Shown piece after piece: positions 11,560 to 22,070 of a stretch of 64,000 nt of DNA; the stretch's first letter is position 1; the number at the start of each line of letters is the position of its first letter. This stretch comes from Bispira polyomma (Eukaryota). Both the position numbers and the translations under genes were made by a program. Below the pieces are notes generated by a model that was given only the letters and a program-made list of their open reading frames with translations, was not told where the DNA came from and did not search any database. The DNA lies in assembly GCA_965649765.1 (NCBI GenBank), contig OZ287757.1, forward strand, positions 33,852,001 to 33,916,000, written 5' to 3'.

Positions 11560-12404
11560 TCGACCACAGCTTTATTTTTGATGACAAATGACTTAAATAC
11601 AACTAAAACTTAACTCTACTAATGTACTTGGCCAATATAAAATAAGTTACCGTTAACTTGTGTTTTCAATTTCAGCATAGTATATATAGACCAGAATGCA
11701 ACTTTATATTTAAATTTAATAATTTTACCCACAAATTACCAAAAGCACTGTAATTAAGTTTAACTCCACCTGTATTATTTTCACTGCTGTGGTAAAAAAA
11801 TCTTTATCAACTCCAGCGTAATAAATTCCATAAATGCATTAATTACCAACCAGATTTAAAATTACAAAGAATTAAAACATTTTTTTACACCATAATTACT
11901 CTGCACACAATCTATACATATTTTAGCATTAAGAATTCTCACCAAAAAATATCACATCACATTCTCCTATTTTCAAGATATTCCATACAAAAGACACAAG
12001 CTTTCAACTGAAACATGTTTTACACAATATATATCAAATCATTTACACCACAAAATAAGCAACACATAAATTAGGTGACACATATTTCTAAACTATAAAA
12101 AAAAAGAAAAACAGTAATGATATTAGGAAAAATTTAAAATATAAATTGTAAAAAAAAACACCACATTTTTAAATTTTTTTAGTAGAATGCAATGAATGGA
12201 CACAACACAGAGACACAAATAAATGTATTTTGTTAAGGCCATTTTGTTACGTTGCCATAACAACACATATCCCAAACAATCTGCTCCCACTGACGTGTTG
12301 TGGTTTCCAGTCGCCACCGGTAGTAGGACTACGTTAGGTGGCAACCTTCATAGTCGTCATAGGAATAGATTTGTTGTCGTAGATGTTACCACGGAAACTG
12401 TAAC
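11560..12404 (-). other. SELENOT: SELENOT exon 6, non-coding 3' UTR exon carrying the SECIS; 3' end uncertain
   Basis: Acceptor TATTTTGTGCAG|GTTAC at 12404; SECIS follows within about 45 nt; AATAAA on the minus strand at 11576-11571 is a candidate poly(A) signal. Confidence 0.8.
12286..12362 (-). promoter_or_regulatory. SECIS element (type II) of SELENOT
   Basis: mRNA reads AUGAA-GGUUGCCACC-U-AA-C-GUAGU-CCU-ACUAC-C-GGUGGCGACU-GGAA: 5' AUGA / 3' GGAA non-Watson-Crick core, 10-bp helix II (12346-12337 with 12318-12309), unpaired AA, apical mini-stem, and lower helix UGACG/CGUCA. Confidence 0.92.
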
Positions 12405-12407
12405 CTG

Positions 12408-12778
12408 CACAAAATAGGTGAAAAATTTTTTTTTTTACTTTGATACAACAAGCTTCAGTCAGTGTCTACAGTGAGTGTTTACATGAACTTTAAAGATGAG
12501 TCACAGTTGAGCCACATGATGTAGAACTCATACCTGAATTTCCCTCTTAGCTGAAGAAAAAGAAGACAAACAACTCCATCCTGCCCCCCCCCACACAAAA
12601 TAGGTGAAAAATTTTTTTTTTTACTTTGATACAACAAGCTTCAGTCAGTGTCTACAGTGAGTGTTTACATGAACTTTAAAGATGACTCACAGTTGAGCCA
12701 CATGATGTAGAACTCATACCTGAATTTCCCTCTTAGCTGAAGAAAAAGAAGACAAACAACTCCATCCTCTCCCCCCCC
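12408..12778. repeat. Near-perfect tandem duplication, about 186 bp x2, in SELENOT intron 5
   Basis: CACAAAATAGGTGAAAAATTTT... starts at 12408 and 12594; only about 2-3 differences. Confidence 0.93.
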
Positions 12779-13135
12779 TCCCTCCTACTGTAAATATATT
12801 GGTCATTCTGTGGAACTTTTTTTTTCTGCTCTACCCAATTTAATTAATTTACAATGTGTATAGATTAGATATCGGTGCCCAAGACCCAAAACTATATAAG
12901 AAATATTGCGGATATCACTAAACAACTTACCCAACTAAGTCTACTCTTATCTAGTACTTTTTGGGCTGCTTAATCTTTACTCTAAGAGAAATCAAAGCGT
13001 CATAACATCCTAATCATAGCTTTCCCAGGCAATATTTGATTGTAAAAGAGACATAAACATGGTGATAATCGATCAATTAGCCACATACCTTAGGCCCACA
13101 CAGAACACATGGTAGAAGGACTTGGTCGTTTGGTA

Positions 13136-13236
13136 TTAGGTGTTGATGCTCATTTTCATATTGTTTTCTACGATCTGGAAAAACTCCTGGGCCGTAGGGA
13201 TCCGTCCTATCTCCAACTTGGACCACACAGGAACAT
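13136..13236 (-). CDS. SELENOT: SELENOT exon 5, coding part (exon continues as 3' UTR to 13089)
   Basis: TCCTCCTTAG|AT GTT CCT GTG TGG TCC AAG; DVPVWSKLEIGRIPTAQEFFQIVENNMKMSINT*; donor AAG|GTATGT at 13088. Overlaps the end of ORF-track entry 13136..13351. Confidence 0.96.
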
Positions 13237-16200
13237 CTAAGGAGGACGGGCATAGCGTAAAATATAGTGAAACTACTATTATCAGAACTATTATATTAGC
13301 CAAAATATTCAATTTTATGAACACAGTATTTCCCAAATTTATGTTTTCCAATTTTATTTTTTATTAATTTAATACAGAAATGTCCTTTTTTTTTTAACGA
13401 ACCTTCTATTATCTAAACAAAATCTCGCGTTCTGAACATGTCCGGATAATATAGGTTCTTCTATAGTAATGCTTTATCTGGGGTGGACATACCCTAAACT
13501 CTATTACGAGGGAGTTTAGGGTATGAAGAATAATTAGTTATTATACAGTGTATTTAGTTGGGGATTTAACGTCGCTTTCAACAGCTTAACTCATGTCACA
13601 ACGGCCAGATTCAATGGTGGAATAATTGAATATTTTTGAATTGGGATATTTAATGTCGATTCTAGTACCTGTTTAGGTTATATTGGGATGGGTAGTTGGA
13701 AACGCTGGAGAAAACACAGCAAACAGTGGCTCAAGGTTCTCCACTGAAACCAGTGGCCCACAGTAAGTAACTACCATCTTTCCCACATAGGCATCAACGG
13801 GAGTCGAACCCACGCCAGCCAATCCCATACGTGAGAGACCAGTGATTGTGAAATGCAATTCTTGCTAACCACTAGGCCACCGCAGCCCCCCAATAGTGGA
13901 AGAAACCAGGGCTAAACCACTGTAAACCACCAATCTGCGGCAAGTACAGTAGACTTTGTATAATTAGAACCAGTCAAATGTAAGTATAGGTGGAACCATT
14001 CTTGAGGTTCCAACATCAGCATCAACATCATGTATTTTTGTAGGTAATAATGGAAGTTTGCTATAACTAGAACCAAATCCTGTGGATATTAGAGGTTCTA
14101 GTCATACAGAGTCTACTGTAATTGACTTATTTAGTTGGAATTTACACCTTTTTCAACAGTAAAAGGGTCTATTTGTATAATAGAAAGGTTTATAACACAA
14201 AAGAAGCATTTTTTTGTATATAACAGTAGAAAAACAAAAAACATTTGGAAGAGTGAAAATGAGTTTATCAATTGACTCCTACACCCGTCAAATCCAAGTT
14301 ATTGTAATTGAAATACAAAAGTAAAGCCTAAGTCCCAGGCTGGTTTGCATGGTGTGAAATTATAAAATTAGAAATACGGGCAAAGGTTAAAATTTCTTCT
14401 AAAAATTTAGAGGCAAATATATTTAATCCACATGCAATTTGCATCTTGCGTCACCTTTGATTTAGGACTCTGATAGTAAACATATATTTCACATGCGAAG
14501 GAATAAATTAATTTTAAATATTGAAAGCAAAGAAATGCTTCTTTTTGTGATTATTAGAAGCCTATATACATATTAAGGAAGCAATTTGCTTCTTGCTTCC
14601 CTTTATTTTCGGACCCTCATATGGATCTGATATTGGAATACATTTACAGTCACAACCCAAGACTTAACTAGAAAGGTTCATCTTCTTCTCTAACCACAGA
14701 TTATAAAGTTTCATAATTACAAATGTTTTTTTTATTTTTTCTCTTAAACCAAAGATAGTAAATGTGTACTATTTGAAAATGTTATTGTAATTGGAATGTT
14801 TGTAAGTAGAATACAGTTTACGTAATAAAATGCAGCCACTTACCGTTAAATGAAATCTCAAAAGCTCCTGTAGAGAGGAGCTGGCCTTCTATAGCGTTGC
14901 TAAGGAAAAATATCATCATACAGGCATAAATCTGAAACAGTGCAACAGAAGCAATGTGTTTACTGAGGAACAAAACATCAACAAATAGGGAGTAGATCTG
15001 AAATACATGCAGTTCAAGAATGAAACAATAAGTTGTCTAATTACTATATGCTTGTTTGTGAAAGGAGAGGTGTTACTAACGCTTGTTTTGGCGCTCACAA
15101 AATACAGAAAAAGTTTTTTTATTGTTTACACAATTAAATAAAACACCCTTTTACTAATAACAACACGATGTTGTACTTTAAGGTTTTGATGCAAGTTGTC
15201 CAAAATAATTCTTTAGTCAAACTTGGAAAGTCTTCTGTTTTTCCAACCAAATTGTGGTCACAGTTATTGAATTTAGTGTTTTTGGTCTATTTTGACAGCT
15301 TTAAAACATAAGGAAGTTTTTTTGTCATTATTGACAGAGATATTTGATTTAACTACTAATAAAATTTATTTTTTTCTGGGGTTATTTTGTACCACCTTAA
15401 CACATTTACAATCAATCACATATAACCCCCCCCCCCCTCTCCCCTATTCTTTTGTGTGTTTGTCAATTTACACTAAAGTTTGAGTTACACAATGCTACAG
15501 TAGGTATGAGCGATAATAAGAAATCTTAAACACCAATAATATAAAGCTTATAAGACACAGTGTAAGGAAAAAGTACTTACTTTGTTTTCCACGGCCCAGG
15601 TATACACACCCGGTGTCCCCAGATTCAACATTGTGAAGGGATTCTGTCCACTAATTATCATAACTATTAAAACTAATTTTGCTATACCTGAAAAAAAAAC
15701 AGAAATATACAAACTTTACAAATAGGTAACTACTAAGTGATTGGAACGGGTAGTTGGAAACACTGGAGGAAACACTGCATACAGTTGATCAAGGTTCTGC
15801 ACTGAAACCAGCGGCCCACAGTAAGGAACTACCACCTTTCCCACATAGGCATCGACGGGATTCGAACTCACGCCGCCTAGAGGTGAGAGACCAGTGATTG
15901 TGAAGCGCAATGCTTGCTAACCACTAGGCCACCGCGGCCCCATCAAAGCCACAGTACGTTAGGTTCTATGATACAATATTGGGTGTTACAATATCACAAA
16001 ATCCCCAAAACAAAGCCGGATTTCTGTGGCTAACTTACATGTTGGGAGTACTTCCTGTACAACAGTTTACATATGATGTGTAAACCTTCTAATTTCATGT
16101 ATTTTGAGTCAAGAAAGAAACTTGTTTTCTCACCTAAAAACTGAGACATATACTGATTGACCATTGGTGGAGGGAAGTTGTCTCCTTCAACACGCAGGTC

Positions 16201-18751
16201 AGGATATTTTTGGTGGATTGCGCGTGAAAACTGCTCAAACGCATTCCGGTACCCTCAGGAGTAGCTGGAACAAAGAAAATTGTACTTATTTGTATTTACT
16301 TTCAAATTGATATTAATTTCTCTGCCTGTGTTTGTTATTCAATGATTGACCTATTAGGGACAGAATATTTGGTCTAACAGTACCCTTATATTTTAGTAAA
16401 CGAATTTGTCTAGTAAATTGCTTAGAGAGCACCAAGAAGCAGCAGGACATTTAACTGTCTTTGACTTGGCAAGAATCGCCAGCACATATACAAGAGGTTT
16501 CGATTTGGGGACCTGATTCCTAACATTTCACTTGTAAGTCGGGTGGTCCATGAATCGTAAGCAAATGGTTAGAACTCGGGTCCCACTAAAAAGTTCAAAT
16601 TCGGGTCCTCGCCAATATCAAATTGGCTAATTTTGCATAAAATTCTCCCTTTGTCGCCATACACGTACTTTCGATATATACATCAGTCACAGACATAATA
16701 AAAAACAAGGTCGGCAGATTTATTAAATACCCCAACAAATAGAAGAGCTCAGAACACTGTCCTCATTAACATAATATATCTATCATGTAACTGCCGTGAC
16801 ATATACTGGCCAGTGATTGCTCCATTAAACAATATTTAAATAAGCAGCTCATGGAAATTTACAAAAGCGGCTTTATTTTATTAAATACCCCAGTAATTAG
16901 CAGAACGCTTTCCTCACTAACATAATGTATCTATCACGTAACTGACAAAAGCGGCTTTATTTTCTTAAATACCCCAACAAAATTTCTAATTTTTTTTTAA
17001 TTACTTAAAACCTGAATCTTAACACTTTACTTGGAAATTGGGGACCCAATTTGTGACAATTTTGTAAGAATTCAGTGACCCAATTTCTAACCACTTTGAA
17101 CATAATTACCTTATATCTACAATTGATAAAACTCCCTGAAAATAGAAGTTGTCTTTTGTTAGTGTACTTGACGTTGAATCTGCAGATTTCACAATTAAAG
17201 GGATGAAATAGATTTCACAGTTAAAGGGATGAAATTTACTGAAGCATTAATAAATAGGGGGCTGTGACTTAAAAGTTATTTTAAACGATGTGATTAGGCA
17301 TCGGGTGACAGGCGCCAAAGAAATTATTAGACGTCGGGTCCCCGAAGTTCAAGTATTTAATATACGTTGGGTCCCATTATTTCTATGAAGTAATTTATTG
17401 AAGTTATAACTTATATAATCCAAATGTATAAATTATAAGAATTGTTTGTTGTTAAATAATATTTTAACATCTATAGATTAAAATACAGCTCCAATTTTCG
17501 CCTAAAACGATCTGTGAAATAAGCCCATTAAGAAAATGTTAAACTCCCGAATCTACGACATACAAGGCTATATATCAATATAGGCGCACAGGTATAAAGT
17601 AATATATGTTACCGATTACTGCCGAATCAATGGTCAGAATCAGTAAAATATCCTTACTTGCAAGTAGGTGCTTTAGGGTGCTCACAACAATGACAAATTG
17701 CCTTATTTGCATCCAATTCTTTTATTGTCGCTCATTTACACATGCTTCACTTCCCCATTAATATCATAATTGAAATAATAGAACTTCACAGAAGTCCCTA
17801 AAAAAGGCTATATTCATCTTGTGTTCAAACAAAAAATATTGTAAGGTACTAAAACAACCATATATCGTTGGGTATATTTGATTTGAGGGTCTTGTAAATT
17901 CGAAATTTCTGTTTTTCTTCAATAACCAAATGTGTTTTATATATTTTACTTATTTATCTTCTATTTTAACATCTCTAGATTTAAATACAGTTTCAATTTT
18001 TGCCAAGAACGATCTTTTTCAATGTGAAATAAGCCCATAAAGAAATGGTTAAAACTTGCAAATCTACGAGACACAAGGCTATATATCCCTTATATGTGCA
18101 CAGCTTTGCTAAAAAAAAAGGTGACCTGATGCCAATTTAATACTTGCACATCAGGGACCCGATGCTTATTCCCTTGCTATTTTCAATGCTGCGACAAAAT
18201 TTAAAACTTCAATCTACGGTATCGTGACTTAAAGCCCATATAGAACTGGAGATTTCTAAAAACAGAAAAAAAAAACTTATTTGTTTGAAAAATTTTCAAA
18301 AAGTTTTTAGAATTTCTAGCTCTATGTGGGCTCGTGCCACGGCTATAAGACAGCAGACTGACGTTAGCCGCGATAACCACGTCTACTGGGAATGAATTAC
18401 GATCAGAATCGTGTGCAATTGTAAAAATTACAGTTGTAATGAAAAATAAAATGATCTCGCTCTTCTATCGTACCTTCATATTTCTGCCATGGGTATTAAA
18501 TAACTATTTACTATTAGCCTAGCATATGGACGATATGACCGCATTAAATTAGGAGACATCCGCATGTGACGAAGGATTTCGACTTACCAGTATAGGAATT
18601 TTAAAGAAGGCCCTGCAAATGTTGATAATCGGGCCTCCGGAATATTTTTCGTAGATTTTTGTGCTTCAACTGGCTTCGTAAAATCCCTGAATGAAAGAAA
18701 ACAAACGGCGACAAATAAGCCTATAACAGCCAATTGCGACGTTTCAGCCAT
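13136..18751 (-). CDS. SELENOT: Selenoprotein T (thioredoxin-like Rdx family, CxxU), spliced CDS of 5 exons, 591 nt / 196 aa
   Basis: Exons of 164+131+107+88+101 nt join in frame at GT-AG junctions: MAETSQLAVIGLFVAVCFLSFRDFTKPVEAQKSTKNIPEARLSTFAGPSLKFLYCYSUGYRNAFEQFSRAIHQKYPDLRVEGDNFPPPMVNQYMSQFLGIAKLVLIVMIISGQNPFTMLNLGTPGVYTWAVENKIYACMMIFFLSNAIEGQLLSTGAFEISFNDVPVWSKLEIGRIPTAQEFFQIVENNMKMSINT*. Recognisable SelT motifs: CxSUGY, YPDxxxEGxN, ENKxYACMM, STGAFEI, NDVPVWSKLE. Confidence 0.97.
13623..13890 (-). mobile_element. SINE family 1 inserted into an older SINE (SELENOT intron 4)
   Basis: TSD CAAT(G/A)GTGGAA at 13612-13622 and 13891-13901; host SINE at about 13555-13945. Confidence 0.85.
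14844..14931 (-). CDS. SELENOT: SELENOT exon 4
   Basis: CTGTTTCAG|ATT TAT GCC TGT...TTT AAC G|GTAAGT; IYACMMIFFLSNAIEGQLLSTGAFEISFN. Confidence 0.97.
15581..15687 (-). CDS. SELENOT: SELENOT exon 3 (hydrophobic membrane-associated segment)
   Basis: TTTTTTCAG|GT ATA GCA AAA...GAA AAC AAA|GTAAGT; IAKLVLIVMIISGQNPF...WAVENK. Confidence 0.96.
15740..15940 (-). mobile_element. SINE family 1 (3' tail lost), SELENOT intron 2
   Basis: High identity to the 47480-47680 copy. Confidence 0.88.
16134..16264 (-). CDS. SELENOT: SELENOT exon 2, contains the Sec (UGA) codon at 16257-16255
   Basis: Acceptor TTTGTTCCAG|C TAC TCC TGA GGG TAC; reads (C)YSUGYRNAFEQFSRAIHQKYPDLRVEGDNFPPP...; donor AG|GTGAGA. Confidence 0.97.
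16215..16247 (-). promoter_or_regulatory. SRE-like (Sec redefinition element) coding-region hairpin 3' of the UGA
   Basis: After UGA plus a 7-nt spacer (GGGUACC), GGAAUGCGUUUGAG-CAGUU-UUCACGCGCAAUCC pairs at 12 of 14 positions (2 G-U) with a 5-nt loop. Confidence 0.6.
16500..18172. mobile_element. One or two decayed foldback-type DNA elements in SELENOT intron 1
   Basis: CGGGTCCC motifs near 16578, 16602, 17335, 17369 and inverse GGGACCC at about 17041, 18154; internal duplications 17460-17590/17965-18100 and 16720-16800/16875-16945. Confidence 0.45.
18588..18751 (-). CDS. SELENOT: SELENOT exon 1 (start codon, signal-peptide-like hydrophobic N-terminus)
   Basis: AAAAATGGCT start context; MAETSQLAVIGLFVAVCFLSF...GPSLKFLY+TG; donor TG|GTAAGT at 18587, phase 2. 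Confidence 0.93.
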
Positions 18752-19869: not shown

Positions 19870-22070
19870 TTTAAGAGCAATATGTACACATGATTTGGGT
19901 GACGTTTTTGATAGGCAAGCGCCATTTGTATCTAGACTGACAAAAAAAGATTCTGCACATTGGTTGTCTGATTCTTATCGACATGCAAAGAACTTGGCAA
20001 ATAAGCTAAGAATCCACTGAACAGAAGTTGGCTTTGTCGCCAAATTGCTCGGTGCAATATACTTGTAAACAAGGATAAGTCAGACTAGTACAATAAACTG
20101 ATCTCAGACAATAGTCACAAGAAAGTTATGGCATGAGCTGCGCATGACCCTGAATATGGTTTCCAAAGTGACAGTTCCATCCCACAAATCTGATAAGTCA
20201 TTAGCTGACCAGTTTGCTTCTTTTTTTTGCAGACAAAATTAGCAAAATTAGAGATACTTTCGTTTTTTTTTCAGCACTAAAATGATGTTCCTCTTCTTTC
20301 TTATCCTCCAGAAATTATTGCCTTTACTAAAGTCTCTGAAGATGCTGTTGATAAAATCAATTGTAACTCGGCTACAAAATCCTGTATGTTGAACCCATTA
20401 CCAACATCTCTCATCAAGGAATTGTGTGATATACTACTCCCATCTATTACAAAGTTGGTTAACTGCCCACTTATTAAGGGACATGTACCTGATGTTTTCA
20501 AAACTGCTGTGGTTACTCCTTTTATTAAGAAGGCTTCTCTTTAAGCTGATGATCTAAAGAACTATCGCCCTGTATTTAATCTTATATTCATATGAAAACT
20601 GGTTGAATGTGTGGCTGCTAAGCAACTATTAGGTCATATCAATGACCACGACTTGGACAACCCACACCAGTCTGCATATAAACAGGTCATTCAACTAAGA
20701 CAACTCTTCTGTCCATAAAAAAAATAAAGTTCATTTTACCTTGTTAAGAGACGAACCTACTGCCTTGATGTTGCTCAACCACTCTGCTGCCTTTGATTCC
20801 ATTGATCATTCCACTCTTCTCAGTTGTCTTCAGACTTGGTTAGGAGTTGGGGGGCTTGGTTCTTAAATGGTTCATGAACTTCCTACTTAACTGAGCGTTA
20901 TCAGTCGATAAAAATTGGTTCTACTTTGTCTGAGATTTGTAAACTCTTGTTTGGTGTTCCCCATGGTTCTGTTTTGGGCCCTTTGTTGTTTTCATTGTAC
21001 ACTGCTCCTCTCAGTTTGGTGATTGGAAAATATAAAGGTATTAAATTTCATTTTTATGCAGATGACACCCAAGTTTATGTGAACTTATGCCAGAAGAATA
21101 CATCTGGTGCCTTTAAACAGGTGAATATGTACCTTGGTGGTGTCAAAGAGTGGATGTTAACTAGTAAACTTAAATTAAATACTGACAAGACTGAGTTTAT
21201 ACTTTTAGGTTTAAAAAGACAGAGGAAGAAGTTGAAAGCATGTTTCCCAATTGATATCCTGGGTGGCCCCTTCTGCCCACCTCATTCAGGTAAGAACGTG
21301 GGCGTGTGGTTCGACTCTGATTTTCCTTTTCTAAACATGTTCGGAGTGTCTGCAAAAGTTGTTTTGTGCAACTCTGAGACTTCAGACGTGTTAGGCGGTT
21401 TCTTACTCATGATGCTTTTATACTTGTGGCCTATGCTTTTGTCAGTGGTCGGTTGGATTACTGTAAGTCACTTTTTAGGAGCCCCTCCAAGTTCAATCTA
21501 CGCAAATTACACTGTATTCAAAATAGTGCAGCTAGAATTGTGTCAAACACCGGTCAATACAACAGTGTAACTCCTGTTCTTAAAAAATTACATTGGCTTC
21601 CTGTTGAACAGCACTCACTGTTTAAAACTGCCACACTTGTTTATAAATTTCTTCACACTGGTTTTCCTAAGTGTTTTGCCTTATATCTATCCTCTTACAG
21701 TAGTTCTTACAATTCCAGGCACAGTCAGAGTGGTGGTAATTTCCTTGTCGTTCCAAAGTTTTACCCGTCTGCTCAAAAGTCAGTTGAACAGTTTGGTTAT
21801 AGCTTTGACGCTCCCATTGTTTGGAATGCTCTTCCTGATGGGATTTGTGCATTCCCCTCTCTAATCTCTTTTAGAAATCAGCTTAAAACTCACCTATACA
21901 CCAAGACACACCCACCCTAGTCTTAATCATCCCCTAGTGTTCTATGTTCCCAACCTTTTTTCTGTCCCTTGATATTAAAATTAGATCACTGTCTTGGTGC
22001 TGTTGCGCCTTAGAGTCGCCTTTGTAAAGGGGAGATTAAGCGCTATAAAAGTCAAATTACAATTACAATC
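19870..22070 (+). mobile_element. 5'-truncated, frameshifted L2/CR1-clade non-LTR retrotransposon (RT ORF2 relic with 3' tail)
   Basis: ORFs 20926-21570 (GVPHGSVLGPLLFSLY, FYADDTQVY, LKLNTDKTE) and 21426-21920 (RLDYC, IQNSAARIV, TPVLKKLHWLPV, LKTHLY); 3' end GCGCCTTAGAG...AAGCGCTATAAAAG followed by an (ATTACA)n tail. Confidence 0.92.

What the first reader, a model, noticed from the sequence alone, without database searches (positions are those of the whole stretch)
12286..18751. Hidden selenoprotein T gene: UGA recoded as Sec, invisible to ORF calling
Seen: five GT-AG exons join into a 196-aa ORF with a single in-frame TGA in a C-Y-S-U motif (the Cys codon is split across intron 1), and a canonical type II SECIS lies in the 3' UTR. 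Established: SELENOT is an ER thioredoxin-like Rdx-family selenoprotein with CxxU. Inference: this organism uses Sec in SelT, and automated annotation would probably truncate or mis-splice the gene.
Basis: partly seen in the sequence, partly recalled or inferred. Interest (0 to 1): 0.8.

Follow-up and report, generated by a model that had tools for sequence, protein, structure and literature searches.

The report
Ordinary invertebrate selenoprotein T gene

Summary
Confirmed, and ordinary. Five GT-AG coding exons on the minus strand (18751-13136) give 196 aa with one in-frame TGA (16257-16255, U58) in C-Y-S-U; the Cys codon is split by intron 1. All five exons match selenoprotein T (SELENOT) relatives, and 38 of 39 related transcripts have UGA at the same codon. 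A type II SECIS lies at 12351-12305: below Rfam's cut-off, but a model built only from other species' SelT SECIS elements ranks it first in the window (37 bits, next 16). The genome holds tRNA-Sec, SepSecS, SPS2, eEFSec and SBP2, and one SelT locus. Added here: a probable intron in the 3' UTR (13088-12405) that puts the SECIS in a sixth, non-coding exon; inside it a 186-bp tandem duplication, each copy with a 17-nt exon-like piece. No RNA run exists, so splicing and recoding are inferred. A conserved hairpin after the UGA was not supported. 'Invisible to ORF calling' is true but is the well-known problem of all selenoprotein genes. The scan noted another selenoprotein (SelJ) elsewhere in this genome; unchecked.

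The parts
18588..18751 (-). Coding exon 1 (ATG at 18751; residues 1-54 and two bases of the Cys55 codon); hydrophobic N-terminal signal/anchor-like stretch at residues 7-21
   Evidence: Kyte-Doolittle 15-residue mean 2.79; profile match to SelT relatives, probability 97%
16134..16264 (-). Coding exon 2, holds Y-S-U-G-Y of the CxxU motif
   Evidence: TIGR02174, E 2.4e-6; probability 99%
16255..16257 (-). In-frame TGA, predicted selenocysteine U58
   Evidence: UGA in 38 of 39 related transcripts, Cys in 1; no variant in DNA contigs
15581..15687 (-). Coding exon 3 (hydrophobic helix of the SelT-specific insertion)
14844..14931 (-). Coding exon 4 (second hydrophobic helix and the STGAFEI strand)
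   Evidence: (hits of 72-91% identity)
13089..13236 (-). Exon 5: last coding part, stop TAA 13138-13136, then 47 nt of 3' UTR up to a predicted donor
   Evidence: Rdx, E 0.005; TIGR02174, E 2e-4
12405..13088 (-). Predicted 3'-UTR intron, 684 nt, GT-AG (inferred, no RNA)
   Evidence: splice sites score like those of the coding introns; genomic relatives L014 and L080-L083 have a donor 1-12 nt after the stop
12408..12778 (.). Tandem duplication, 2 x 185 nt at 98% identity, found only here in the genome, inside the predicted UTR intron
   Evidence: about double depth in two DNA runs
12720..12736 (-). 17-nt exon-like piece (strong acceptor and donor), copy 1; use unproven
12534..12550 (-). 17-nt exon-like piece, copy 2; use unproven
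12286..12404 (-). Predicted non-coding exon 6 (3' end unknown; nearest poly(A)-signal-like hexamers at 11720 and 11576)
12286..12366 (-). Type II SECIS: helix I, AUGA/GA core (12351-12347 with 12308-12305), 10-bp helix II, apical AA, 5-bp mini-helix

Best explanation
An intact, single-copy selenoprotein T (SELENOT) gene of an invertebrate animal. The pre-mRNA is spliced from five coding exons and most likely a sixth non-coding exon. SBP2 binds the SECIS in the 3' UTR and, with eEFSec and Sec-tRNA(Sec), makes the ribosome read UGA 58 as selenocysteine. The product is a 196-aa ER-membrane protein with a split Rdx/thioredoxin-like fold and a C-Y-S-U redox motif that acts as a thiol/selenol oxidoreductase. 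Shown: reading frame, family, conserved UGA, SECIS-shaped element, machinery genes. Inferred: splicing, recoding in this species, ER location and activity.
For: Frame. Family hits on exons 2 and 5 at the two ends of the CXXU_selWTH profile. About 63-64% identity summed over five exons to the closest transcripts L033 and L034 and 51% to a named insect SelT homologue. UGA at the same codon in 38 of 39 distinct spliced transcripts. Same intron positions in genomic relatives L079 and L084. SECIS model from 20 other SelT loci finds this element first. tRNA-Sec, SepSecS, SPS2 with its own UGA, eEFSec and SBP2 in the genome. One locus only.
Against: No RNA run for this organism: no junction, transcript or recoding was seen. 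The SECIS is under Rfam's cut-off and has U-A at the lower core pair, though L032, L052, L014 and L063 share that. SECISearch3 and Selenoprofiles could not be run.
Confidence: 0.95

Rival explanations
1. A pseudogene or truncated gene in which TGA is a true stop.
For: No expression data; the SECIS is weak for Rfam's model.
Against: 138 codons after the TGA stay open and conserved over four exons, it is the only SelT locus, the TGA sits exactly on the family's Sec codon, and a SECIS and the machinery are present.
Confidence: 0.02
2. The gene is SELENOT but the 3' UTR is not spliced: the SECIS lies 786 nt after the stop in a long exon 5, and the duplicated piece is plain UTR.
For: Some related transcripts have their SECIS 250-875 nt after the stop; no RNA here.
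Against: Good donor and acceptor; a donor just after the stop in five genomic relatives; the spliced distance of 102 nt falls in the 60-108 nt range of the transcripts most alike in protein.
Confidence: 0.15
3. Another Rdx-family selenoprotein (SelW, SelH, MIEN1/Rdx12) rather than SelT.
For: The Pfam and NCBIfam models that hit cover the whole Rdx group.
Against: Length of 196 aa, N-terminal hydrophobic stretch and the hydrophobic insertion (exons 3-4) that splits the Rdx domain; relatives that carry a specific name are called selenoprotein T or its homologue. A separate Rdx exon lies on another contig (L001).
Confidence: 0.01

Closest known systems
SELENOT / SelT of marine invertebrates (one copy each in Amphimedon, Trichoplax, Nematostella, Lottia, Capitella, Branchiostoma; PMC3473315)
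   Same: Single copy, listed as a selenoprotein; C-Y-S-U-G-Y motif, length and intron positions match the invertebrate loci fetched here; AUGA_AA type SECIS.
   Different: Nothing of substance in the protein. The tandem duplication with two 17-nt exon-like pieces in the UTR intron was not seen in the four genomic relatives inspected.
Mammalian SELENOT (PMC9344019, PMC3177196)
   Same: CxxU motif in a thioredoxin-like fold, membrane-inserting hydrophobic segments, type 2 SECIS.
   Different: Motif C-Y-S-U instead of C-V-S-U. ER location, OST contact and oxidoreductase activity are shown for mammals only, not here.
Insect Cys homologues (CG3887-like, e.g. P0115)
   Same: About 51% identity over the five exons, same architecture.
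   Different: They have C-Y-S-C; this gene has TGA and a SECIS.

Membership tests
SELENOT (selenoprotein T) | Homology to SelT over the whole length | tested here: met
   Exon by exon; names. The joined protein was not searched.
SELENOT (selenoprotein T) | N-terminal CxxU motif with U encoded by in-frame UGA | tested here: met
SELENOT (selenoprotein T) | Rdx / thioredoxin-like fold split by a hydrophobic helical insertion | tested here: met
   Profile positions 10-39 on exon 2 and 52-74 on exon 5. The fold itself was modelled on a homologue (P0115, pLDDT 82), whose best matches are SelW-like Rdx proteins (E about 3e-3, probability 1.0), not on this protein.
SELENOT (selenoprotein T) | ER membrane location and oxidoreductase activity | not testable with these tools
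   Only hydrophobic segments seen
Eukaryotic selenoprotein gene | SECIS in the 3' UTR with AUGA...GA core, helix II and apical AA | tested here: met
   Rfam SECIS_1 matches all 64 positions but at 21.4 bits, under the 35-bit cut-off
Eukaryotic selenoprotein gene | SECIS is on the mature mRNA | tested here: inconclusive
   No RNA run; no AATAAA or ATTAAA between 12404 and 11720, but the stretch between the stop and 12404 was not scanned
Eukaryotic selenoprotein gene | Sec machinery in the genome (tRNA-Sec, SepSecS, SPS2, eEFSec, SBP2, PSTK) | tested here: met
   PSTK was not sought, and the split genes were seen exon-wise only
Eukaryotic selenoprotein gene | Sec actually inserted at the UGA | not testable with these tools
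   needs 75Se labelling, mass spectrometry or ribosome profiling
Type II SECIS | Apical bulge with AA plus a mini-helix and small loop | tested here: met
   5-bp mini-helix with a 3-nt loop (predicted)
Sec redefinition element (SRE) | Conserved stable hairpin just 3' of the UGA | tested here: not met
   z = -1.5, 14 of 200 shuffles fold as well; no consensus pair in 20 homologues

The most novel reading that the evidence does not exclude
The 3' UTR is alternatively spliced to regulate the gene: including one or both duplicated 17-nt exon-like pieces would move the last exon junction from 47 to 64 or 81 nt past the stop codon, across the usual 50-55 nt threshold for nonsense-mediated decay, or an alternative last exon would drop the SECIS and so switch Sec insertion off.
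Probability: 0.1. Interest if true: 0.4.

Novelty: new member of a known kind. Interest (0 to 1): 0.13.

Why it matters
It is a correct and useful annotation: without Sec-aware tools the gene would be cut at codon 58 or mis-spliced, as happened to several relatives in public databases. It shows that this animal uses selenocysteine, which is the norm for marine invertebrates. It does not surprise a specialist or open a standing question. Only the possible UTR micro-exons would add something, and they are unproven.

Tried and rejected
Rfam at its cut-off found nothing in the window. Word search with exon 2, PDB sequence search with exon 2 and the Atlas search gave nothing; the pieces are too short, so this says nothing. 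A genome-wide search with my SECIS model scored only 150 of 174,893 candidates and missed even this element: uninformative. The covariation counts are circular, since the elements were picked by a pairing scan; only the search of the window and of held-out loci is a test. An SRE hairpin was rejected. Assembly error at the TGA was rejected (same study as the assembly may be the source, so not independent). A model of a C-terminal fragment was poor and not used. A host gene on the same strand enclosing SELENOT was looked for with a crude splice-site scan and not found. The large representative search was not used, as the word search and family scans settled the family. The joined spliced protein was translated only inside a script to check the frame; it was not sent to any search, alignment or fold.

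Full report
Observation. The gene lies on the minus strand of a 1.04-Gb, 75-contig animal-sized assembly. Exons 18751-18588, 16264-16134, 15687-15581, 14931-14844 and 13236 onward are bounded by GT-AG introns of 2323, 446, 649 and 1607 nt and join to 196 codons ending in TAA at 13138-13136. There is one in-frame TGA, at 16257-16255 (residue 58), in the context F-L-Y-C-Y-S-U-G-Y-R; the Cys55 codon is split by intron 1. Contigs from three DNA runs (two samples, one study, perhaps the source of the assembly) cover 15920-16478 without a difference, so the TGA is no assembly slip. No RNA run holds the region, so nothing below about transcripts of this species is observed.

Family. Searched exon by exon; the joined protein was not sent to any search. 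Exon 2 and exon 5 match the first and last parts of the SelT/SelW/SelH profile TIGR02174 (positions 10-39, E 2.4e-6; positions 52-74, E 2e-4), with exons 3 and 4 forming the hydrophobic insertion between them. Exon 4 found 15 proteins at 71-91% identity, and one of them led to 272 relatives; those with a specific name are called selenoprotein T or its homologue. Exons 1 and 2 match the profile of those relatives with probability 97% and 99%. Summed over the exons, identity is 63-64% to the closest transcripts (L033, L034) and 51% to a named insect Cys homologue (P0115). A model of that homologue has the strand-helix-strand, helical insertion, strand-strand-helix order and matches SelW-like Rdx structures best. 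The genome has only this SelT locus.

The UGA. Among 39 distinct spliced transcripts of related genes from metatranscriptomes and assemblies, 38 have UGA at the same codon and one has Cys. Genomic relatives L079 and L084 have introns at the same places, including the one that splits the Cys codon. In the databases the gene callers began these relatives after the UGA, and named entries skip or garble the Sec exon (P0077, P0090, P0125).

The SECIS. A pattern scan gives one minus-strand hit in 64 kb, with AUGA at 12351. It folds into helix I, the core, a 10-bp helix II, apical AA and a 5-bp mini-helix, z = -3.6: type II as defined in PMC3177196, which also lists mammalian SelT as type 2 and says the outer core pairs vary. 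Rfam's SECIS_1 aligns over all 64 positions but at 21.4 bits, under its cut-off of 35. I therefore built a covariance model from 20 SelT SECIS candidates of other species, without the window. It ranks this element first in the window at 37.2 bits (E about 3e-7; next hit 16.4) and finds elements in nine held-out SelT transcripts at E below 2e-4. The less usual 3' core GGAA has parallels in L032 and L052, and GGAU is common in the set.

Machinery. The genome has six tRNA-Sec matches over the Rfam cut-off, five called SeC(tca) by ARAGORN and all six with the TCA anticodon in sequence; an intronless SepSecS (E 3e-153); a selenophosphate synthetase with its own G-U-G-C-K motif; the eEFSec C-terminal domain; and an exon whose only PDB match is SBP2 (E 1e-12). 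PSTK was not sought.

A donor at 13088, 47 nt after the stop, and an acceptor at 12405 score like the coding splice sites. Five genomic relatives have a donor 1-12 nt after their stop, and in three of them a SECIS was found 0.4-1.2 kb further on. Splicing would bring the SECIS to 102 nt from the stop, in the 60-108 nt range of the most similar transcripts; unspliced it is 786 nt, which some more distant transcripts also reach. So a sixth, non-coding exon is likely (about 85%) but unproven. Inside this intron is a 2 x 185-nt tandem duplication at 98% identity, unique in the genome and about double in read depth. Each copy has a 17-nt piece between a strong acceptor and a donor, the only such short candidates at that score in the window. 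If used, they would put the last junction 64 or 81 nt past the stop, beyond the 50-55 nt NMD rule (own knowledge). Nothing shows that they are used.

Mechanism. Most likely the standard one (established knowledge, PMC3541580): SBP2 on the SECIS and eEFSec with Sec-tRNA(Sec) recode UGA 58; the protein enters the ER membrane and works as a CxxU oxidoreductase in protein folding and N-glycosylation as described for mammals (PMC9344019). The frame, family, conserved UGA, SECIS shape and machinery are shown; recoding, location and activity are inferred.

Verdict. A real, correctly read feature and a new member of a well-known family. One SelT selenoprotein gene is reported in each of six marine invertebrates from sponge to amphioxus (PMC3473315). 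Interest is low (0.13); the UTR micro-exon idea is the only part that could be new.

Noticed in passing
L002-L007 (G000 C2, C6, C12): Six tRNA-Sec copies over the Rfam cut-off, four of them within 35 kb on contig C6, plus a weaker seventh there; from memory most animals have one or a few.
   Followed up: partly
window 18779-18774 (-): An ATG directly followed by TGA lies 28 nt upstream of the start codon and in frame with it; it may be upstream of the transcription start (a CTTCCGG ETS-like motif follows).
   Followed up: no
No partner exons found.
   Followed up: partly
window 13682-13889 and 15740-15941 (+): Two copies of a very high-copy short interspersed repeat in introns 2 and 4 (read depth 10^5-10^7).
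   Followed up: no
window 20926-21920 (+): Decayed reverse-transcriptase (RVT_1) fragment, in two frames, about 2 kb upstream of the gene; looks like a LINE remnant.
   Followed up: partly
L001:1501-1581 (-) (G000 C8): Exon of a second Rdx-family gene, SelW- or MIEN1-like, not SelT.
   Followed up: partly
L027 (G000 C9:35507633-35508817): SepSecS appears as one uninterrupted 501-codon frame, i.e. without introns.
   Followed up: no
L029:1501-1563 (+), L028, L030: Further SECIS candidates elsewhere in the genome; L029 also scores 34 bits with the SelT-derived model. Their genes were not traced.
   Followed up: no
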